A stretch of 64,000 nucleotides of DNA from Trichosphaerium sp. ATCC 40318 (taxonomy: Eukaryota; Protista; Tubulinea): contig JALMLS010000343.1 of the NCBI GenBank assembly GCA_038496445.1, positions 1 to 64,000 of the forward strand, written 5' to 3'. Every line of letters begins with the position of its first letter. The stretch's first letter is position 1. The translations under genes and the position numbers were made by a program. Below, one piece after another: positions 6,283 through 33,838 of the stretch. The notes beneath the pieces are model-generated. The model had not been told where the DNA came from and did not search any database. It saw only the letters and a program-made list of their open reading frames with translations.

Positions 6283-9181
6283 TCACTGTTTGTGTCCTGC
6301 GTTTCTGGTATCTCTAGAATCCCCTCGTGCAGAGTTCCGTCTGTTCTTGTTACCACTGCGCTTTGAGTGACGTTGTGGGACACCTCCACGAGCTTTCTGA
6401 ATTTCAAATACTTCACGCTTCAACAAGTGAATGTATTTGCACTACAATGCGATCGTCAGCAAACAAGTAGGTATTGGTGGTACTAAATGTTGCTTGGAAA
6501 GAAAAATAATAAAAATGGAATGTGCCAAAGTGGATTGAAAAGCAGTCATTAACGTAGACAAACTCTCCACCTAACCTGGCTTTATTTTGCTATTCGAAGT
6601 CTAGTTGCAAGTGTTTACACATATGGGATCAATGTACGCTCGTACGCAATCAAGAGTAAACAGCTGAACCGTCTCGGAAAAATGCCAATAGGGTTTTCAA
6701 CAAAAAAAAAAGCAAAGGTGCCAAAAAAGAAAATGCCGCTGAAAGTTGTGCGTACCTCAACTTTTTTACAAACGCCTTGGTGAGCGAAATCGTAGCAGTA
6801 TGTAAAGTTTGCGTTGTTGCCTTGTGGTTGAGGAATAAACGTATGAGGAATTGCATTACGCCTAGATCGCCACTGTAGAGGGACATAAGGAAGAGTCACT
6901 TTATCAACTGTCGGTAAATCACGCTGATAGGCATGCAAATCAAATGTATTTGAGGCATCACCAGAGTCATCTTGCACATCAGGCATTTCCTCGTCTTCTT
7001 TGGAGCCTTCGTCATCGATCTCGTCATCAATGGACAATGTCAGAGCTGAGGTGTCAGTACTCTGTTTGTGGGTTTTTTGTTCGATAATGCTTTTGTACAA
7101 GGTAACGGTATCTTTCTTGGAAGGTTTGTGCAGCAAGTATACACCCGGACTAGACAACTTGACTTGTGTGAGTACAGCTGATATCGCTTTAATCATGCGC
7201 ATATCCCTTGATAGCAACGTCAGGTCAGAACAAAAAAAAAACGGGGAAAAAAAAAAGGGGTACCTAAACTGGGTATTATACGCAAGTACTTCACTCTCAT
7301 CCTCGGTGACATCCACGGATACAACTGTTCCTTCGTGTGCACTCAATCGCACAAACAAACCTCCCACTGATGCAGTCTTTTCGAGATAAGCTGAAATCCA
7401 ACGCTCTCCCAACTCAAAAGTTGTTTGTTCTTCCAGGCCAAGATCGCTACGATACTCCAGCTTCACAAATGCGTGTTTGGGCTGCCCCCGAATTGTACAA
7501 TCATGTCGCGTGCGAATAAGAACGTTTGCATAGCCTGTTGGTGAAGAGGCACGCCACAAGTCGTACTTGGCATGCAACTCACTCGGCATTTTATTTCCTC
7601 TACCAAACGATAACAAGGTGGATATGGTTGTGTTATAAAACTCTTGTTGTATTTCCCTTGGTGTAAGGGTTTGGGGAAGAAGGGGAGCGTCCACATATGC
7701 GACAAATCGCCGTTTACCTTGCGGTTGTGTAACTACATGCACAGGCAATGTCCATTCCTAAACACATGTGAGTTGGGACAACAACAAATAAAAACACTGT
7801 TAAGAGGGTTTTTTTTTTTTTCCGTACCTCTTCAAAGATGGGAGGGTAGTTATTAGCTATTGTTTTAAGTGCCTCAATAGAGATGACAATGTCAATTGGG
7901 TGCGAGGATAGCATGGTACCTGAGTTTGGTTAGAAAACAAAACAAACAACTTTTTTCGAAAAAAGCGTTCTTACCAATTTCCTTGTCAGCAGCAATTGAA
8001 ACATTCTTGCTCTGGTGATCGTTGAACAACGTTGTGGCCTGTATCTCTTCGTACTTCTTTATAACATTTCCAAAGTCTATAGGTGCAACATCAGCGGGCA
8101 CACCCTAAAGGAACAGAGTTTTAGCGAAAACTGTCAATAGCGAAAAATGGTGGAATCAAAAACAAAATTCTCTACTATTTTCAGTCTCGGGAGTGATCAC
8201 ATTTAATTCAATCCTACACTGCTTTTTTGCATCACATAGGCAGATTGCTTTCGGAAATTTGTAAAAAGAGGTTGCAAAAAAATACGTACAACGGAGCTAA
8301 TGCTCTTCTGAAATTCGAACTTGTAGTCTTCTCCAGGCTGAGTTGTAAGGGTTATCTTAGCCATCTCCTTGTACCTACCGCGAGCTAAATTTATTAACAA
8401 GTTCAAGAGTAGCCAAGAAAAAAAAAAAAAAAAAAAAAAAAAAGGACAAAGCCAAAAAAGTACGTACTTGCGTGGCAACGAAGTACCGCATTCACTTTTA
8501 GCGGCATAAAACTTGTTCATAAAGCCACCCACTACTGGTGGTAGTTGAACATAGCGGTGCATCAACTTTCGTGCGTTCTCACTGTCAAGCCTTCTAAAGG
8601 AAGCGCACTCTCGTTGAACAATGACAGACAAGTCCATAAACTCTTTACTGCGCCTACCACTGGCGTCGTTCATCAGAGCGAGAAAGCGGGTGTGTTGTGT
8701 ATGTGTCAACGCCGACAAACGCAAGCTTCCAGCATAAGTCGGTAGAGAACGTTGTGGAATAGAGGCAGTAGTCGGAGGGTTGGTTCGAGACGGCGGCCGC
8801 TGGCTAGGAGGTGCCTGTGGCAGCGCAGTGACTGAGTCTTCCGTGCCTTTCTTCTTCGACACTAGTTGCTTCTCGCGTTGTTTTGAAGTTGTAGTTGTGC
8901 CGCTCGCATTGGTGTATACAAACGCCGCATTGTTGAATGGTTGCGCCGTTACCTCGTTATATTTTTCATAGGTATCCTCGTCCAAAAATGATTCTGAAGA
9001 AGGCGTAGGGATTATGGCATCTGATATTAGAAACTCAGGGACGTCTATCAATACGTGCTGTGGCAGCTCCTTTAGTTTCTCAAATCTACAACAAACATTT
9101 TTGGTTAGCTATTACCTCTTTTTGTTGTTAAAAGAACATGCTAGTTCCTAAATCAAACGCGTACGAAAATTTTTCTTCCAT
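6283..9181 (-). CDS. ICE2/NARG2-like protein (NARG2_C domain) with C-terminal CCCH zinc finger, multi-exon
   Basis: YDLW..NVLIR..VKLEYRSDLGLEEQTTFELGERWISAYL resembles NARG2_C. Splicing 6755->6442 joins CYDFAHQGVCKKVE|CKYIH (CCCH). Confidence 0.65.
6518..6680 (-). ncRNA. Intronic box H/ACA snoRNA, predicted guide for the LSU rRNA A-loop pseudouridine (snR10/SNORA21-like target)
   Basis: Hairpin, H box ATAGCA (6593-6588), second hairpin GCCAGG..TTTGGC, then ACA (6523-6521). Pocket strands GGTG and CAATCCA pair with conserved LSU UGGAUUG-U-U-CACC, 14 nt from the ACA box. It lies in an unusually long 314-nt intron. Confidence 0.8.
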
Positions 9182-13294: not shown

Positions 13295-15850
13295 TTAAGG
13301 TACTCTTTCATAGCCGTCTGATTTGCCGCCGAAGAAGCAACAACAGTATACTAACAACATCACAATAACAATCGCAAAAATTATACCGAGGACAATACCG
13401 GCAATAGCGCCAGCACTTAGAGATTTGGCTAACAAAAGTAGTTAAAAAGGATAATCACTTTCAAAAATTGTGTAAGCAAGCGTACATGTAGGTGCTGTAG
13501 TTGGCACCTCGGTGGTAGGTGCCAGAGTAGGTGGATGTATGGGTGCGATTGGCGGTTGAACTGTTGGAGCAACTGGTTGTATTGGCGCTACAGGTTCGGT
13601 TGTAGGTGTTGTTGGAGCAACTGGCAATGTCGGAGTAGTTGGTTCAACTGGTGTTTCTGTTGGAGCAACTGGTTGTATTGGAGCTACAGGTTCGGTTGGT
13701 GTTGTTGGTGCGATTGGTGGTTGAGCTGTTGGGGAGGAAGGTGCGGTTGGTGCGATTGGGGGTTGAGCTGTTGGGGAGGAAGGTGCTGTTGGTGCGATTG
13801 GGGGTTGAGTTGTTGGGGCAACTGGTTGTGTTGGAGCTACAGGTTCGGTTGGTACTTCTGTAGGTGTTGTTGGAGCAACTGGTGATTGTGTAGTTGGAGC
13901 AATTGGCAATGTCGGAGTAGTTGGTTCAACTGGTGTTTCTGTTGGAGCAACTGGTTGTATTGGAGCTACAGGTTCGGTTGGTACTTCTGTAGGTGTTGTT
14001 GGAGCAACTGGTGATTGTGTAGTTGGAGCAATTGGCAATGTCGGAGTAGTTGGTTCGACTGGTGTTTCTGTTGGAGCAACTGGCTGTGTTGGAGTGGTTG
14101 GTTGAGCTGGTACTGATGTTGGAGAGACCGGGGATACAGGTTCAACTGGAGTTGGTGAGGTTGGTACCGATGGTGAAGTTGGTGTGGATGGAGCGACCGG
14201 AGCAATAGGAGAAGCACTTGGAGCAGTTGGAGATGTTGGAGTACTTGGGGCAATTGGTTCTGCTGGTGATACCGGTACTATTGATGGTGACGTAGGTGTT
14301 CCAGGGGATATTGGTGCACTAGGGGACGATGGTACTATAGGAATAGGCGCAGTGGGGGATGCTGGGATGGCGGTTGGTGAAATGGGTGCCACGGGTGTTG
14401 AAGATGGTGCTGTTGGGGTTGCAGGTGCAGATGGACCAACGGGCTCTTGAGTAGGTGCGACAGGTGCTACTGGTGCGCTGGTTGGAGCAACAGGAGCCAT
14501 AGGAACAGCAGTTGGAGCCACGGGAGCTACAGGAGCCACAGGGGTAGCTGGAGCGTTAGGTGCGGTTGGTGCGGTTGGTGCAACGGGTATCAGAGTGGGT
14601 GCAACAGGAGCTACAGGAGCCACAGGAACGGCAGTTGGAGCTACAGGGGCCACAGGAGCAGCGGTCGGTGCGACAGGAGCCACAGGCATCTGAGTAGGGG
14701 TGACAGGTGCCACTGGCACGCTAGTAGGCGCAACAGGAGCCACGGGAACATCAGTTGGCGCGACTGGAATAACGGTTGGCGCCACGGGCATCTGAGTAGG
14801 AGCGACAGGTGCTACAGGAATCTGAGTAGGTGCAACAGGAGCTACTGGTGCGTTGGATGGAGCAACAGGCGCCACAGGAACAGCAGTTGGGGCCACAGGA
14901 GCCACAGGGGCACTGGTTGGAGCCACAGGAGCCACAGGAATCTGAGTAGGTGCAACAGGTGCTACAGGAATACCAGTTGGAGCCACAGGAGCCACAGGAA
15001 CGGCAGTTGGAGCCACAGGAGCCACAGGGGTAGCGGTTGGAGCAATAGGCGCCTGGGTAGGAGCTACAGGAGCACTAGTTGGCGCAACAGGTGCTACAGG
15101 GACGGCAGTTGGAGCCACAGGAATCATGGTAGGCGCTACAGGAATCGCAGTTGGAGCCACAGGAACCATAGTTGGTGAGACTGGGGTAGCAGTAGGAGCT
15201 ACAGGAGCCACAGGAACGGCAGTTGGAGCTACAGGAGCTACTGGTGCAGTAGTAGGTGCAACAGGAGCCACAGGAACGGCAGTTGGAGCTACAGGAGCCA
15301 CAGGGGCAGCGGTTGGAGCCACAGGGGCAGCAGTTGGAGCAATAGGTGCCTGGGTAGGAGCCACAGGAGCCACAGGAGCAGCGGTTGGAGCTACAGGAGC
15401 CACAGGTGTAGCAGTTGGAGCTACAGGAGCCACAGGGGCAGCGGTTGGAGCTACAGGAGCTACTGGTGCAGTAGTAGGTGCGACAGGAGCCACAGGAACA
15501 TCAGTTGGCGCGACTGGAATGACGGTTGGCGCCACGGGCATCTGAGTAGGAGTGACAGGTGCGACAGGTGCAGTAGTAGGTGCGACAGGTGCGACAGGCG
15601 CCACAGGGACAGCGGTTGGAGCCACAGGGGCAGCAGTTGGAGCAATAGGCGCCTGGGTAGGAGCTACAGGAGCGCTAGTTGGCGCAACAGGAGAAGTTGG
15701 CGCAACCGTAGTTGGGGAAACTGTGGGTACTGTGTCGTTAGCACCTAGGAGACAGTTAACTAAATGACAAGACCAAAAAAAAAGAGGCCATACCACCACA
15801 CCAAAATTCTGGGTTTGGAATGCAAAAACTACAATGAATCTCTCCTAATT
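13295..15850 (-). CDS. Mucin-like Pro/Thr/Val/Ala-rich type I membrane protein (5' exons unresolved)
   Basis: About 750 aa of PVAPT repeats; spliced last exon [42 protein letters not shown] (TM, Cys cluster, YxxV); upstream Cys-containing exon [14 protein letters not shown]. Confidence 0.8.
13500..15725 (-). repeat. Coding repeats ([13 protein letters not shown] units plus larger duplicated [25 protein letters not shown] blocks)
   Basis: Periodic ggagccacag/ggagctacag motifs. Confidence 0.9.
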
Positions 15851-25786: not shown

Positions 25787-28700
25787 CTAATTCAGTTTAG
25801 CTTCTACAGAGTCTTCTCCTTTAAGTTTGTAGAGCGCCCCATTAGGGAATGCTTGCAATGAGTCAACGAGCAACATAGACTTTTGTACGTTGGTAACGAG
25901 TGGTACACCAAAATCAATAGCCAAACGCCTTACTTTGTAGCCTTGAGAAAAAATGTTAGAGGGAAAATATAAAATCTTACTACTCACCTTTGGTGTCGTA
26001 TTTATGAGACCTGTGGTGCTTGTATTTGGATGGATACACCAACGCCAATCCAAACTTTCCTGATGAAATGAGGTGGTCAACAGATGAGGTAGGTGCAGCT
26101 CCTTCTTCTGGCCACATCAACGCGGTGATATTGACTTCATTAGAAGACAAAAAGTCTGCTGTGCCTGGAGTTCCATAGAGGCGATATCCGAGTTTTTGGA
26201 GTTTCTTTGGAGGAGTTAGTTCCTCTGCTTCCTTCATTATCATCATAGTAGACATACCTTTGCGTAAGGGAGAAATGCCATCTTATTTCCGTATGACCCA
26301 AGAGAGAGCAATACATTGCAGCCAGCGTCTGGTTTGCGGAATCCAGTCGCTACCAAGGCCTTCAAAAAGGCGCCATGTATACATGTGCCAAAGCAAGCTA
26401 CTTCGCCTGTTGAGTGCATTTCGACTCCAAGCCTTGGATCGGATCTACAAAAGAGTGAGCAATATGTACATGGTGTAAGTTGCTAAATTACTACTCACCC
26501 TTGTAGCCTAGAAAAGCTAAATTGCGAAGCCTTGACACCAATTCTATTGTTGTTTTTAAGAGAACTTTGCCAGGCATCGATGTCGTCTTGGAAAGGTAAT
26601 CCTAGTATGGCCTGAAAGTAATATGAGCCAAGATAAGTAGTGCAAGCAGGGAACTTTACCTTTGTAGCTACGGAAATAAAGTTTATGCCAAGAGTCTTCG
26701 ATACGAATGGGAAGCTCCTGGATGACCTCAAGTTACATTCAATGACCTTTATATCGTTCCCTTTGACAATATACTGAATATTAACAGGCCCTGTGACATT
26801 AAGGTTCTTTGCAATCTGGCTGGTGATGGTCCTGAAGTAAAATTAATAACAAACGTCATAAAAGTAAAGGCAACTTACGTGATCCTGTCGATGATATCTT
26901 TTCCTACAGATTGTGGTGGAAGCACCAATGTAGCATCACCTGAGTGAACGCCAGCGTTTTCTACGTGCTCAGATATAGCCTTGACGACTATTTTGCCATC
27001 AACAGCAACTGCATCAACATCAATCTCTTTCGCTATAAAAGAGCTTAATTAACAATCCTTCAATTACTCAAAAGGGGTACCTCCAACAATGAACTTTGAA
27101 ATCACAACGGGGTGATCGCTATTAATTGCACTAGCACGTTCGAGATACTTCTTTACACCAGCTTCGGAGTGCGCTACGCTCATACCACTGCCTGATAAGA
27201 CGAAAGAAGGACGGACCTGCAAGGTATTAGAAACGACAATTTTAAACACAATGACATACCAAGCAGGGATATGAAACCTTGTTACAAAAAGATAGAGTAT
27301 CTGGAATACTTAAACACTCTTTCCATTCGGGTTGGTCTATTGCTAATCCATCGAGCATCTTTGAGAAGACGAACCTGTTTTCAGCGCGCTCTATTTGAGG
27401 TACTGGTGTGCCGAGAATCTACACCGCTTTAGTATTGACTCAAACTGTTGTTTTAAATAACACTCACCTTGACTTTGTAGTCATGGAGCTTAGGTGCCAG
27501 ACAATTAGGGATTTGTCCTCCAAACGAAATGATTACACCTTCTGGTGATTCACGTTCATAGATATCACAGACAGTCTCAAAAGTGAGCTCCTCAAAATAA
27601 AGGCTATCACATTCATCGTAATCTGTGCTCACCTATTCAAGCATGAGAATACAATTACTTTGGCAAAAATTTTACAACTTACCGTTTCGGGATTGTAGTT
27701 AATCATGATGGAGAGTTTACCACTAGCCTTAAGAGTTCTTGCAGCAACGACGGCTCCCCAATCAAACTCAACACTACTTCCAATACAGTAAGCTCCGCTA
27801 CCAAGCACGATAACTCCTCCTATTGTTTATCAATTCAAGTATCAAAATAAAAGCAAGTTATACCTTTGTCTTTATCAACGTCATCTTGAGATCCATGATA
27901 CGTGAGATACAAGTAGTTGTTTATTGCAGGGTACTCAGCTGCAACGGTGTCTATTTGCTTGACGCTTGGCGTCACGTTAAACGACTTTCGAAGTGCTCTA
28001 AGAGTAGAATTAGATGTGGCTTTGTAATGCCTTTATAATAACGTACCGCACTTGAAGTTCTTCTGTACCAAGGCACTGAGCTATGTGCTTGTCTGAGAAT
28101 CCAAGTTTCTTGGCTTTTATCATTGATGGCTTTGTAAGGTCTTTCAATGAGCCAACATCTTTCGTAATAAAAGTCTCAAAAGAAGAAATGCGCTTCAGTT
28201 GTAGCAAGAACCACTTATCAATTTTAGAAAGCTCGTGTATTTTATCAACAGTGTAACCTTCGTTGAGAGCTTGGGCTCTAAAAAGATAGTCAGTAAGTGG
28301 GAAAACGTAACCAAAGATGGAAACATACAAAGCAAGAATGCGATCATCTGAGGGTTGAGCGACACGTTCGTCATTAACTTCAATGCCGTATCCGCTCTGG
28401 AATCCAGTTGTGCCAGGGTATGCCATGCGTACAGCCTTCTGGATGGTTTCTGTAAAAGTGCGACCAATAGCCATCACTTCGCCAACACTTTTCATAGCAG
28501 TACCAACTTGGGAATAAAATAAGAAAATTATTGTGAGGTAACAAAAGGGGTACCATCGCTTGACACTTTCTCGAACTTGTTGAGGTCCCATCGTGGTATT
28601 TTTATAACGACGTAGTCCATAGAAGGTTCGAAACATGCTGATGTAATACCTGTGACAGAGTTTCGCAGCTCATGTAGCGTGTAACCAAGAGCTAACCAAA

Positions 28701-31610
28701 ACGTTAGAAATAGCCAGAGGGTATAATTTAAATACCTAGCTTTGCTGAGACAGCAGCTAATGGGTATCCTGTTGCTTTACTGGCAAGCGCAGATGACCTG
28801 GAAAGCCTAGCGTTTACTTCTATTATGTAATACGTTCTGGAGTGAGGATCCAAGGCGATCTGTATGTTACCTACTCGAAAGGTAAGTGAACAATAAAACC
28901 AAAAAGTTGACGCACATTCACCAATAACTCCTAAATGGCGCACTACGCGTAGAGCTACCATACGAAGCATGTGATACTCGGCATCATCTAACGTTTGACT
29001 AGGCGCTACCTAGAAACACAGTGAGCTTATTGTAACGAGGCAGGGTTATAAAGAACACGTACTACTATGCTTTCTCCAGTATGAATGCCCAAAGGATCAA
29101 AATTCTCCATATTGCAGACAGTGATGCAATTATCTTCACAATCACGTACTACCTCGTACTCTACCTCTTTCCAACCGTATAATGAACGTTCGACCAAGAT
29201 CTAAGCAAAATCTTAGATGATATTGTGAACAATCTAGTACGCACCTGAGAAGATTTGGCGAAAGCAAGAACGGCCAAGTTCGTTAGTTCGTCTTTGTTGT
29301 TGGCAAACCCAGAACCAAGGCCACCCAAAGCAAACCCAGCACGAACGATTACAGGATATCCTATACGTTCTGCTGCATCCAAAGCTGCTTGTATACTGAG
29401 ACAAGGTACTGAAGGTGCGATAGATTCTCCAATCTCCTCCAATTTTTGTGCGAAAATGCCTCGATCTTCAGTGTTATTGATTGCTTCTATTGGCGTTCCG
29501 AGTACATTGACATTGTACTTTTTAAATATGCCTTCTTTCCACAATTCAATACCGGTGTTGAGCGCCGTTTGACCACCTACACACGAATTAGTCACTCAGT
29601 CGAAGAGAGATTAAAGTACCAAAGGTAAGAAGAATGCCATCTGGTTTTTCCTCTTCGAGTATTTGTATTACAAATTTTGCTGTTACAGGAAGGAAATACA
29701 CTTTATCAGCCATGCCACGCATGGTTTGTACGGTAGCAATATTAGGGTTAAGTAGTATTGTGTATATGCCCTCTTCCTTTAGTGCTTTAATTGCTTGACT
29801 ACCAGAATAGTCGAACTCTCCAGCTAAGTAGGGTCAGTTATTGAATCTCAACGTGTCCGAAAGCAAACTTAAAAACCGAACTCACCTTGTCCAATTGACA
29901 AGCCACCAGATCCTAGAATGAGGACCTTCTTTGGTTTGTATGGTTTTGCATTCCCAAACGTGTGGGCAAGAGGCACTTGAGCGTTTGTTTCGCCGTTAAT
30001 TTGGTTCAAGAACATATCAAACAAGTACTCGGTTTCTTTAGGTCCAGCATTTGCTTCAGGATGAAACTGAACTGTAGAGTACGGTTTGCTGACGTGTCGA
30101 ATGCCTAGAATCCACTGGTTAACACGTGATATAGCAAAATGTGGGAAAGTCGTACCTGCATTAGTGCCGTCGTTTGCGTTTATAAAGTATGGTTCCCACT
30201 CCTTTGGGAGGCTCTTTACGTCAACTTGATATCCATGGTTTTGCATGGTCAAGTGACATCTACCAGTTGTTTGGTCAATACAAGGCTGGTTTTGGCTTCT
30301 ATGTCCAAATTTCATTTTTTTTGTCGTTGCTCCTGCCGCCTTGGCTATGAGTTGATGCCCTAGGCATATACCTTCTGGAAGTGAGCAAAATGATAAAAAC
30401 AACAGAAAAAAACATGTGAATCTTACCAAACACTGGTACGATTTTGTGTGGTGTTTCTCTGGTAAGTACTGTACGTATGTGTTTCACAGTTAGATCACAC
30501 ATATCCGGATTACCTGGTCCGTTGCTATTGGGGAGGATTAGCACTTCGGAAAGCGCGCCATTTTTTGTACCTCACGAATATAGCATCGTAGTCATCGTCC
30601 ATTGTAAAGTCATAATCGTAAGGTACCCGTTTTATTCTAAGGAGAAGAAAATTTAATGCGGAGAAATTTTTACGAAGCTAATTCTTACTTTAATCCCCGC
30701 TTCAATAAGCATCTCATTTGATTATACTTTACACCACAGTCTACCACTAACACTGTTTTTTCTCCTTCACCATAATACTGGATCTTGTCCGTAGTCACTT
30801 GTGCTACAAGACGTCCAGTATCTGGATCAATTACGGGACATTCTTTGTTATCTTCATCAATAATAATTTTTCCTTTTAGTACACCATTGTCTCTGTGAAC
30901 GATAAATAAGTACAAGATTTATGGTAAGATCAAAAGTCCCTCGGTACCGTATTTTCTGAATAAGTGCGCGTGTGTCAATGTCATAAAGCGCAGGTATTTC
31001 GTGCTCTTTCAGCCATTCTGAAAGTGATTTTTTTGCCGCCCAGTGGCTGTGTCCAATAGCAGAATACTCCGCGACTAGTGTTCTCGTAAGCGATCGTGTC
31101 TAAACAAGCGTAAAATAACGCACCTATAAGGCCGGCTACATGAATTTTATTCGATTCAAAGTATTTTTTAAGACCATACACGTCCTTCTCATCACCAGGT
31201 ACGCCATAGTTACCTAAATTGGTTTAAGCGTGTCAATAAACCATGCATGAATTTTCCAAGATTGTTTAAGAAGGCATCTTACCGATGAGAGGAAATGATA
31301 GAATCAGGATTTGGCCCTAAACGCGAATAAGAATAGGCTAATAAGGCAAAAGTTGGTGCCAGCGTTATATTTTTCATACAAAAAAACTCCTAACACCACG
31401 TACCTTGTAACTTGGATCTGTTAAGCTCTCGCAGTAGCCTACCATTCCTATCCGTGTGTAAAAATATTTACAGTACGTTCCCGCTTTTAAAAAACATCCA
31501 TAACCAACCGTACCAGTTTGAAATACCACTTCACCTCCTTTGTTATTGTTGGCACCAAAAGAAATCCCATCAAGGGTTGTGCCATCTTCAAGTATAAGTT
31601 TCCCAGACAT
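25787..31610 (-). CDS. Glutamine-dependent carbamoyl-phosphate synthetase, fused small+large subunits, no DHOase/ATCase, multi-exon
   Basis: [20 protein letters not shown]; SNGPGNP; GICLGHQ (catalytic Cys); QFHPE; [22 protein letters not shown]; [24 protein letters not shown]; [12 protein letters not shown]; VRPSFVLSG; [13 protein letters not shown]; MGS domain [14 protein letters not shown], then stop. Confidence 0.97.
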
Positions 31611-31617
31611 TTTTCGT

Positions 31618-31669
31618 CTAAAAAGCTATTTAGCGACTCTGAAACACTCGGTAATCGTTTATGGCGTAC
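31618..31669 (-). other. Predicted 52-nt intron in the CPS 5' UTR, between the uORF and the main ATG
   Basis: aaaa|GTACGCC...GCTAAATAGCTTTTTAG|acgaaaaATG matches the donor, branch and acceptor pattern of other introns in the window. Confidence 0.7.
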
Positions 31670-31711
31670 TTTTGATTTAATTTTTTGCCTTTAATTGTTA
31701 AATGTTTGTTT

Positions 31712-31798
31712 TCAATGTTTCTGTGCTTTCCAGATGTTATCACACAAGTAGTCGAGTTCAATGCGTATGTTAATTTGTCGACCTTCACTACAGCCCAT
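31712..31798 (-). promoter_or_regulatory. uORF encoding an arginine attenuator peptide (AAP)-like peptide, MGCSEGRQINIRIELDYLCDNIWKAQKH
   Basis: ATG at 31798 to TGA at 31714-31712. DYLCDNIWKA aligns with N. crassa arg-2 DYLSDHLWRA and yeast CPA1 DYISDHIWKT; it lies directly 5' of a CPS small-subunit domain. Confidence 0.88.
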
Positions 31799-33838
31799 CA
31801 AGTTTCACTTTGAGGATTATGAAGAATTCGTGTTGACAATTTTGGGCGTAACTTTGAAATATTGTTAACTCACCTCACAAAATTTGTCAGTTACGAGAAA
31901 TTTCTCAACTACCCGCTACTGTTTAACTTTATGCGTGCGAAAGCGGTGACAAGCACTTCTCCAACATGGTGTCGTTATACTGCAACATGCGATAAGCGGC
32001 TACTATTACGTCTTGTGCAGAAAAAAAGGATCTTGGATCAAGATTCAGTGTTTGTTATTTGTTTACACAGTGCTCCACACTAAAACGTAGTCGGTGCTAT
32101 GCCGTGATTGCCAACCGCGTTGCGCGTATACAGGTTTCAACAGGATATTTCGTTGTACAACAAACATGAGCACAATTCCTGTCACGTGTGTTTCTATCTC
32201 CATCGACGCACGTGACAAATTTGTAGCTTCACTTGTGGCATTTTTTTAACGATCGTTCATTTCATTGCACTTGAATTTGTACCCGAAAGCGATGCTGTAA
32301 CAAAACCCAACGTAGCACGTGATAAACATAAACAACAACAATTTTAGTACTTATTTGACAAATTCAAACAATACGAAAGTGTTTCGTGGCGTAGTTTTTT
32401 TATCCGCCATAGCTACCTCAAAAATGTTGTCTAAACCTAGCAGTACTCTAAAGATATATGTACAAAGCCAACGTTTTTTTATAACAGTCAAAAAAAAAAG
32501 GTGTACCAACCGTGCTTAGTGCTATTAATATCAAGGTGCACATGTGAACCTTCTACTCCTTTTATATTTGTCCGAACAGACTAATAGTTTAGTGGTTGGA
32601 TTTCAACCTAAAATTATGGCCGAGATTTATAGATTTCTTCATACAGCGATTAAACTACGCACCTAAAAGAATACTAGTTTAACATTATAAGCCGCTCCGA
32701 ACCATCTCATATTCAATACAAGAGCACAGGAGATTTCCGAAATTCCTAGCGACCACGGAGCTCAACGGGCGCTGTATGAGTGCCTTCCGAATGTTCTCAA
32801 GTTGAAAAGATCAGGTTCAGATACAAAATAGCTGTTGCTATTATTTCGCACAAACTCGCAAAATACGCAAATACACTACGCGTATACAATGTAAATATAA
32901 TAAATTGCGGAGGAGAACTACATAAAAAAATACGGCGTAGTTTCTTTTGTTTTTTGAACTAAAAAAAATCACTTCCGTAAAGGTACAGAGGCCTCCAAAA
33001 ATTGCAATTCACGTGTTCGCTGTAGTCCCCCACATGTTTTCCGTAAATTATACGCTTTTGAACATTAAAGCAAATGCATCAAAATAAAGGAGAAACTTGT
33101 TTTGTTCAATTTTATTCGCAATCGTCTTACAAGTGACAAAGGGGCATTTTGGGTGAGGACGTTTTATTCCGTAGATTTATTTCTACGTATACGTCTCGTT
33201 TTAGTGATAATCTGAGTGAATCAGCCGAGAACAAAAAACTGGATTATTACCCATATCTTTGTTTCGCTTTGTAATACATTGCTTGGCAGTTTTGACTGTA
33301 TTTTTCGAAGTTCTAGGTAAAAACCGCGCAACAGCGATTTTTTCCGTTCTACCTGCTTGAGTTTGTCCGCCCTCAGCCCTGAGGTTCACACGCTCACCAT
33401 CTCCGCGCTCTCTGACTCGGTAGAAAACAAAAACGTATCTGCGTATCTAAACAATCACGTGCGCAATTAAAACGAGTGTCGGTACTTTTGCGAAAAAAAA
33501 CTTCACCAAACTAGTTTTTTGGTTATTATATTCATTTTTAAGAACAAACACAACAAACGCAACAACACTAGATGATAACAACAGAGCATACAAATAATGT
33601 GGTTCTATACCCACCTTTTAAAAGCCCATGCGATGCAGCAGCAACAGCGCTGGTGAACATGTGGGGAAGAAAGAACCATTGCAGTTCATACAAAGCTGTA
33701 CCTTTCTCTAAACCCAAAATATCGTGGTACGAAAAATGAAACGTTTTACAAGTTTTTTTTTTGTTTTACCCTTTTGTAAAAAAAGCAGTGTGAATTAGCC
33801 CGCCAAATAAACTATTCTTTGGGATGTAAGTTTAGCGG

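What the first reader, a model, noticed from the sequence alone, without database searches (positions are those of the whole stretch)
31712..31798. Arginine attenuator peptide-like uORF upstream of a fused CPS in an apparently non-fungal eukaryote
Seen: a 28-aa uORF, MGCSEGRQINIRIELDYLCDNIWKAQKH (absent from the ORF track), ends ~100 nt upstream of the CPS ATG on the same strand. Known: fungal arg-2/CPA1 (CPS-A small subunit) mRNAs carry an AAP uORF (N. crassa ..DYLSDHLWRALNA; S. cerevisiae ..DYISDHIWKTSSH) that stalls ribosomes at the uORF stop when arginine is high. The critical Asp, Tyr and Trp are present here in the same spacing (DY-x2-D-x2-W), with the same five residues between Trp and the stop. 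Inference: a nascent-peptide arginine sensor controls a single-chain small+large CPS in a protist, a context different from the textbook fungal system.
Basis: partly seen in the sequence, partly recalled or inferred. Interest (0 to 1): 0.92.

Follow-up and report, generated by a model that had tools for sequence, protein, structure and literature searches.

The report
Arginine-attenuator-like uORF before amoeba CPS
A 28-codon upstream reading frame in the transcribed leader of a single-chain carbamoyl-phosphate synthetase gene, probably of the marine amoeba Trichosphaerium, carries the core of the fungal arginine attenuator peptide, so this arginine-sensing ribosome-stalling switch may exist outside fungi; its function has not been tested.

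Summary
On the minus strand, 31798-31712 encodes MGCSEGRQINIRIELDYLCDNIWKAQKH. It lies 101 nt (49 nt after removal of a 52-nt leader intron) upstream of the ATG of a 1457-aa GATase+CPS gene with 28 short introns.

- **Transcript:** spliced RNA contigs from four runs join the whole uORF to the CPS exons. It is the only upstream AUG.
- **Chance:** DY..D..W occurs once in the six-frame translation of the window. The core motif is expected about 6e-6 times in a 200-nt leader.
- **Family match:** a profile of 16 natural attenuator cores that I retrieved ranks this peptide first of 3,040 window peptides (E 0.0014). Like 31 of 33 natural examples, it has exactly five residues between Trp and the stop.
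- **Differences:** Cys replaces the Ser seen in all 33 and Asn replaces His/Gln. The gene is a CAD-type single-chain CPS, not a fungal small subunit.
- **Organism:** genome statistics and a 1457-aa gene model in the published Trichosphaerium gene table fit. That table also lists a 2132-aa CAD-like protein, ornithine carbamoyltransferase and argininosuccinate synthase.

Arginine-dependent stalling is inferred, not shown. No orthologous leader could be examined. The scan had not noted this elsewhere.

The parts
31712..31798 (-). 28-codon uORF plus stop (MGCSEGRQINIRIELDYLCDNIWKAQKH*), the only upstream AUG of the mature leader
   Evidence: contained in spliced RNA contigs of runs X1, X2, X4
31727..31753 (-). 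Core D16-Y-L-C-D-N-I-W-K24, matching the attenuator core DY[IL]SD[HQ][LIV]WK; D16 corresponds to the critical Asp of the fungal peptide
31712..31714 (-). uORF stop codon UGA, five residues after Trp; predicted stall site (A site)
   Evidence: five residues after Trp in 31 of 33 natural examples
31799..31820 (-). 5' end of the mRNA: contig ends at 31801/31802 (one followed directly by Illumina adapter, depth 43) and 31820; no RNA depth upstream until about 32685
31670..31711 (-). First part of the A-rich intercistronic spacer (42 nt)
31618..31669 (-). 52-nt GT..AG intron in the 5' leader, between the uORF stop and the CPS ATG
   Evidence: (joint 31617/31679 with bridging letters in X2 and X4; loose ends in X1), read
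31611..31617 (-). Last 7 nt of the spacer; the CPS ATG has A at -3 while the uORF ATG has T at -3
25787..31610 (-). Single-chain GATase + carbamoyl-phosphate synthetase gene: 1457 aa, 29 exons, catalytic Cys kept (GICLGHQ), no N-terminal presequence, no DHOase/ATCase
   Evidence: the same length as TRSP30557.t1 in the Trichosphaerium gene table

Best explanation
The uORF encodes an arginine-attenuator-type ribosome arrest peptide that ties translation of this amoeba's non-CAD carbamoyl-phosphate synthetase to arginine supply. Proposed mechanism, inferred from the fungal system: scanning ribosomes meet a single uAUG in weak context (T at -3) close to the cap. At low arginine, many ribosomes skip it, or translate the uORF, terminate and resume, and so reach the CPS AUG (A at -3) 49 unstructured A-rich nucleotides further on. 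At high arginine, the nascent DYLCDNIW segment in the exit tunnel, together with arginine, inhibits the peptidyl-transferase centre. The ribosome then stalls with UGA in the A site, five residues after Trp, blocks following scanners and lowers CPS synthesis. The spliced junction 42 nt downstream of the stop might add mRNA decay. Shown here: the sequence, its significance, its presence on the spliced CPS mRNA, the gene architecture, and the listing of a separate CAD-like protein, OTC and ASS in the published gene table of the probable source genome. Inferred: translation of the uORF, the arginine response and the stall.
For: The peptide and its position are confirmed. Natural attenuator uORFs obtained with tools are Conidiobolus CPA1 MYSHSQEKNSSDYISDQVWKALASD and 33 metagenome loci with DY[IL]SD[HQ][LIV]WK upstream of CPS genes, including yeast-type and Neurospora-like peptides. 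A profile built from these ranks the window uORF first of 3,040 six-frame peptides, E 0.0014. The Trp-to-stop spacing of five is the same as in 31 of 33 of them. Spliced RNA contigs join the uORF to the CPS exons in four runs. The mature leader has one uAUG, a 49-nt spacer and no excess structure, z +1.3. The Trichosphaerium gene table lists a 1457-aa CPS, a 2132-aa CAD-like protein, OTC and ASS. This fits a dedicated arginine-pathway role for this CPS. An AAP-like uORF is already known to act in a non-fungal eukaryote, Toxoplasma (PMC8370653).
Against: There are no functional data. No orthologous leader could be examined, so conservation is untested. Cys replaces Ser and Asn replaces His/Gln at two positions that did not vary that way in the 33 CPS-linked natural examples, although the search pattern allowed both. 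The residues before the core (IEL) do not resemble the fungal TSQ. One abundant RNA 5' end is only 4 nt upstream of the uAUG, which could make the uORF largely skipped. The CPS sits in the CAD/URA2-type clade rather than the arginine-specific clades, although one alternative placement was not rejected.
Confidence: 0.58

Rival explanations
1. The uORF is translated and dampens CPS translation, but not through arginine-dependent arrest. It would be an ordinary constitutive uORF, or a sensor of another ligand, and the changed Ser->Cys and His->Asn positions would have abolished or altered arginine sensing.
For: Two family-uniform positions differ. No functional data exist. The CPS belongs to the CAD-type lineage.
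Against: Seven of nine core positions, the critical Asp, Tyr and Trp, and the exact Trp-to-stop spacing are kept. That is hard to explain without selection on the peptide. Natural family members tolerate Gln for His and Val for Leu.
Confidence: 0.2
2. The uORF is mostly bypassed because the main transcription start is 4 nt upstream of its AUG. The resemblance would then be a relic or of marginal effect, or would be used only on a longer leader isoform.
For: A contig end at 31802 is followed by adapter sequence at depth 43. A second contig ends at 31801. Only one contig reaches 31820.
Against: Contig ends are poor maps of transcription starts, and one run does reach 22 nt upstream. An intact 28-codon frame with the motif would not be kept without use. 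Leaky scanning past the uAUG is part of the fungal mechanism (PMC11550727).
Confidence: 0.12
3. The resemblance is due to chance, in a non-functional short ORF.
For: The similarity is confined to about 10 residues of a single sequence with no comparative support.
Against: The expected number is 6e-6 (core) to 6e-9 (strict) per leader. The motif occurs once in the window, exactly in the leader of a CPS gene. The spacing to the stop is also correct.
Confidence: 0.05

Closest known systems
Fungal arginine attenuator peptide (uORF of N. crassa arg-2 / S. cerevisiae CPA1 and orthologues)
   Same: A short uORF (here 28 codons; 24-25 in the model fungi) in the leader of a CPS mRNA. It has the core D-Y-[LI]-x-D-x-[LIV]-W-K, five residues from Trp to the stop, a weak uAUG context and a short spacer to the main AUG.
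   Different: The host is an amoebozoan, not a fungus. The regulated gene is a single-chain GATase+CPS of the CAD-type lineage, not the arginine-specific small subunit. Cys replaces Ser and Asn replaces His/Gln. The N-terminal flank is unrelated. The arginine response is untested.
Toxoplasma gondii ApiAT1 (arginine transporter) uORF
   Same: It is a non-fungal uORF peptide that resembles the attenuator peptide. It has a critical Asp and mediates arginine-dependent repression. Its authors interpret it as convergent (PMC8370653).
   Different: It controls a transporter, not CPS. It is 33 residues long and restricted to coccidia. It has been tested experimentally, unlike this one.
Other ligand-dependent eukaryotic arrest uORFs (AdoMetDC uORF with polyamines, hCMV gp48 uORF2)
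   Same: The nascent peptide acts in the exit tunnel and stalls the ribosome at termination to block scanning (PMC2075485; PMC7969011).
   Different: They have unrelated sequences and different ligands and target genes.

Membership tests
Arginine attenuator peptide (AAP) uORFs | Short uORF located in the 5' leader of a carbamoyl-phosphate synthetase mRNA | tested here: met
   Spliced RNA contigs join the uORF to the CPS exons. It is the single uAUG of the mature leader.
Arginine attenuator peptide (AAP) uORFs | Conserved core DY[IL]SD[HQ][LIV]W[KR], including the critical Asp (N. crassa D12) | tested here: inconclusive
   Seven of nine positions match; D16, Y17, D20 and W23 are present. Cys replaces Ser and Asn replaces His/Gln, states not seen in 33 natural CPS-linked examples. 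The profile score is 15.6 bits, E 0.0014, rank 1 of 3,040.
Arginine attenuator peptide (AAP) uORFs | Stop codon about five residues after the Trp (stall at termination) | tested here: met
   Five residues (KAQKH) follow Trp here; 31 of 33 natural examples also have five.
Arginine attenuator peptide (AAP) uORFs | Regulated gene is the arginine-specific CPS small subunit of a fungus | tested here: not met
   The gene is a single-chain 1457-aa GATase+CPS in a clade with CAD/URA2-type enzymes. The organism is probably Trichosphaerium. In metagenome contigs the same uORF type also precedes large-subunit genes.
Arginine attenuator peptide (AAP) uORFs | Arginine-dependent ribosome stalling and repression of the main ORF, lost on Asp->Asn | not testable with these tools
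   This needs toeprinting, reporter assays or ribosome profiling.
Arginine attenuator peptide (AAP) uORFs | Conservation of the peptide in orthologous leaders | not testable with these tools
   No protein above 59% identity exists in the searched collections. The Acanthamoeba best hit named in the published table could not be retrieved.
CAD/URA2-type CPS II lineage (downstream gene) | Groups with CAD/URA2 CPS domains in a phylogeny | tested here: inconclusive
   It sits in a 99* (SH-aLRT) clade with Cyanophora, Picozoa, fungal URA2 and animal CAD in a quick LG+G4 tree. The nearest protein is a metagenome CAD at 59% identity. The branch is long, and an AU test on the large part did not reject grouping with CPA2-like genes, p 0.27.
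CAD/URA2-type CPS II lineage (downstream gene) | C-terminal dihydroorotase and aspartate carbamoyltransferase domains | tested here: not met
   The ORF stops after the MGS-like domain at 25789-25787. There was no tblastn hit to residues 1487-2239 of a URA2 anywhere in the window.

The most novel reading that the evidence does not exclude
A working arginine-attenuator peptide exists in Amoebozoa, on a stand-alone CPS that descends from the CAD lineage. There are two ways this could have come about. The peptide switch may predate the fungi and have been inherited, or moved between CPS paralogues, within Amorphea. Alternatively, evolution may have twice found the same roughly nine-residue solution, DY[LI]xDx[LIV]W plus five residues, for sensing arginine in the eukaryotic exit tunnel.
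Probability: 0.35. Interest if true: 0.85.

Novelty: new variant of a known kind. Interest (0 to 1): 0.66.

Why it matters
The arginine attenuator peptide is the best-studied eukaryotic ligand-sensing arrest peptide, but it has been treated as fungal. The one reported non-fungal look-alike, in Toxoplasma, sits on a transporter gene. A second non-fungal case, again on a CPS gene but with a different enzyme architecture and two natural substitutions in the core, would matter in three ways. It would make the origin of the switch (ancient or convergent) testable. It would provide natural variants (Cys for Ser, Asn for His) for structure-function work on how peptide plus arginine silence the peptidyl-transferase centre. 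It would also show how an amoeba that keeps both CAD and a separate CPS controls carbamoyl phosphate for arginine synthesis.

Tried and rejected
1. **Primary AAP papers.** The papers I asked for (PMC3003393, PMC3434499, PMC109333, PMC3568992, PMC384695) are not held, and peptide strings are not in the searchable text. I therefore derived the family from DNA instead.
2. **Close relatives of the CPS.** The representative library, an exon query and proxy full-length queries with Cyanophora and Stereomyxa CPS gave nothing above 59% identity. The Acanthamoeba protein named as best hit in the published table never appeared.
3. **Profile of a proxy plus window exons.** MAFFT scattered the short exon peptides, so I dropped this approach.
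4. **Contigs of near hits.** P0002 is an ordinary CAD with an ATCase part. The fused CPS on L123 (grouped with CPA2-like genes, not) has no such uORF in its 247 upstream nt. The nearest CAD, L124, has none either. P0076 had no DNA available.
5. **Organism.** Notes on G-insertion mitochondrial editing pointed to heterolobosean 'BB2'. I dropped this in favour of Trichosphaerium, based on other agents' notes, the matching genome statistics and the 1457-aa gene model.
6. **Trees.** The small-subunit tree was unresolved.
7. **RNA families and tRNAs.** Rfam and tRNA scans of the window found nothing.
8. **Transfer from a fungus.** Horizontal transfer of a fungal arg-2/CPA1 cassette is rejected, because the CPS is not in the CPA1 or CPA2 clades.

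Full report
**Observation.** The finding's coordinates are right, but the feature is on the minus strand. ATG 31798-31796 opens a 28-codon frame, MGCSEGRQINIRIELDYLCDNIWKAQKH, that closes with TGA at 31714-31712. The next ATG on that strand, at 31610, starts a protein whose first residues align with the N-terminus of CPS small subunits.

**The downstream gene.** I used tblastn against full-length homologues, and for the first half of the gene the splice junctions seen in RNA contigs. This gave a 29-exon model with 28 GT..AG introns (mean 52 nt, three of them in frame). It encodes a 1457-aa single chain: GATase with the catalytic Cys in GICLGHQ, then both CPS halves and the MGS-like domain, with the stop at 25789-25787. 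It has no N-terminal presequence. No dihydroorotase or aspartate carbamoyltransferase part is detectable anywhere in the window.

**Transcript evidence.** Logan contigs of four public runs, from two coded organisms and 99% or more identical to the window, lack the introns, so they are RNA-derived.
- Single contigs run from CPS exons through the ATG into the whole uORF: X2 covers 30454 to 31801 and X4 covers 30948 to 31820.
- They reveal a 52-nt intron (31669-31618) between the uORF stop and the CPS ATG.
- The mature leader therefore has exactly one upstream AUG. A 49-nt A-rich spacer follows it, and the leader has no more structure than shuffled sequence, z +1.3.
- Contig ends lie at 31801/31802, one directly followed by adapter sequence at depth 43, and at 31820. 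No RNA is seen further upstream until about 32685.
However, some transcripts may carry only about 4 nt before the uAUG.

**Is the resemblance more than chance?** The loose pattern DY..D..W occurs once in the six-frame translation of the 64-kb window, at this uORF, against 0.06 expected. The core DY[LIVM]xDx[LIVM]W is expected 6e-6 times in a 200-nt leader, and the stricter family pattern 6e-9 times.

The primary papers on the peptide are not held, so I built the comparison set from DNA.
- The arginine-specific small-subunit gene of Conidiobolus coronatus has the uORF MYSHSQEKNSSDYISDQVWKALASD, ending 15 nt before its ATG.
- One scan of metagenome contigs with a degenerate pattern returned 120 loci. 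In 33 of these the motif ends a short ORF upstream of a CPS gene on the same strand. They include a yeast-type peptide (MFSLSNSQYTCQDYISDHIWKTSSH) and a Neurospora-like one.
- In 31 of the 33, exactly five residues follow Trp, as in the window.
- A profile of the 16 distinct cores ranks the window peptide first among 3,040 six-frame peptides, at 15.6 bits and E 0.0014.

The match is not perfect. All 33 have Ser where the window has Cys, and His or Gln where it has Asn, although my pattern admitted both. The residues before the core are unrelated.

**Organism.** Nearest proteins are never above 59% identical and come from very different eukaryotes.
- Notes from other agents of this scan name the genome as Trichosphaerium, a marine amoebozoan.
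- I could only check this indirectly. The published draft genome has 37.7% GC and short introns (mean intron 75 bp, mean exon 154 bp). It was accompanied by small single-cell transcriptomes, which fits the window, the gene model and the tiny 2023 runs.
- Its gene table lists TRSP30557.t1, 'carbamoylphosphate synthase, large subunit', of exactly 1457 aa.
- The same table lists a 2132-aa protein described as dihydroorotase, with a dictyostelid best hit (a CAD-like protein). It also lists ornithine carbamoyltransferase and argininosuccinate synthase.
- So the organism appears to have CAD for pyrimidines plus this separate CPS, and at least part of the arginine pathway. This makes an arginine-pathway role for this CPS plausible, but it is an inference.

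**Lineage of the CPS.**
- A small-subunit tree was unresolved, but the protein is not inside the fungal CPA1 clade.
- A large-part tree placed it away from CPA2-like genes. An AU test nevertheless did not reject joining them, p 0.27.
- A full-length tree of 51 sequences put it in a 99* clade with Cyanophora, Picozoa, fungal URA2 and animal CAD. That clade is separate from animal CPS I/III and their oomycete relatives.
- The closest single protein is a metagenome CAD.
- Taken together, it looks like a CAD-lineage CPS without the DHOase and ATCase parts. This is held with moderate confidence because the branch is long.
- Transfer of a fungal arg-2/CPA1 cassette is therefore not the explanation.

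**Mechanism proposed.** By analogy with the fungal system (PMC11550727; PMC7969011; PMC8370653), there are two states.
- At low arginine, ribosomes skip the weak-context uAUG (T at -3), or terminate and resume, and so reach the CPS AUG (A at -3).
- At high arginine, the nascent DYLCDNIW segment plus arginine arrests the ribosome with UGA in the A site. This blocks scanners and lowers CPS synthesis.

The exon junction 42 nt downstream of the stop could link stalling to mRNA decay; that is speculation. None of these steps is shown here.

**Comparison and novelty.** In the held literature I found the peptide described only for fungal small-subunit genes, apart from one convergent look-alike on a Toxoplasma transporter gene. 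No paper joins it with Amoebozoa. This case shares the family's core, spacing and location. It fails the 'fungal small subunit' criterion, has two novel core residues and lacks functional proof. I file it as a new variant of a known kind.

**What could not be done.** No orthologous leader was reachable, so conservation, the strongest computational test, remains open.

Noticed in passing
L014:9413-9439, L015:5108-5134, L040:515-541, L074:4178-4204, L101 (about 300 nt before its CPS hit): In five metagenome contigs, an attenuator-type ORF end (DYISDHLWKAQVN* or ...ANVN*) lies 86-303 nt upstream of a CPS large-subunit (CPA2-like) gene rather than the small subunit. L014, L015 and L074 form a 100* clade. 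I found no mention of this in the held literature.
   Followed up: partly
L081, L037, L047, L025: Several metagenome attenuator uORFs read through extra residues between ...TSQ and DY..., as if an intron splits the uORF just before the conserved core.
   Followed up: no
window 31618-31669 (-): A 52-nt intron in the 5' leader puts an exon junction 42 nt downstream of the uORF stop codon.
   Followed up: partly
window 30105-30155, 28278-28328, 26612-26659 (-): Three introns of the CPS gene (51, 51 and 48 nt) are in frame and free of stops, so retaining them would insert 16-17 residues rather than truncate the enzyme. The first is confirmed by RNA contigs; the other two are modelled from homology.
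   Followed up: partly
window 13442-15799 (-): A 785-aa ORF made of Ala/Pro/Thr/Val repeats (mucin-like) lies in a block of 56% GC with strong GC skew.
   Followed up: no
P0325, P0429, P0490 (proteins): Single-chain GATase+CPS proteins of 1424-1448 aa, close to eukaryotic ones, are annotated in the planctomycete Ca. Uabimicrobium amorphum and in Paludibacteraceae genomes from metagenomes.
   Followed up: no
window 6615-7748 (-): A 377-aa ORF carries a NARG2/ICE2 C-terminal domain (Pfam E 1.9e-12).
   Followed up: no
metagenome loci (49 of 121 matches): The same degenerate pattern also picks up a conserved DYLRD[QKH]FWK motif inside long ORFs of an unrelated protein family, which is a caution for motif-only searches.
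   Followed up: no
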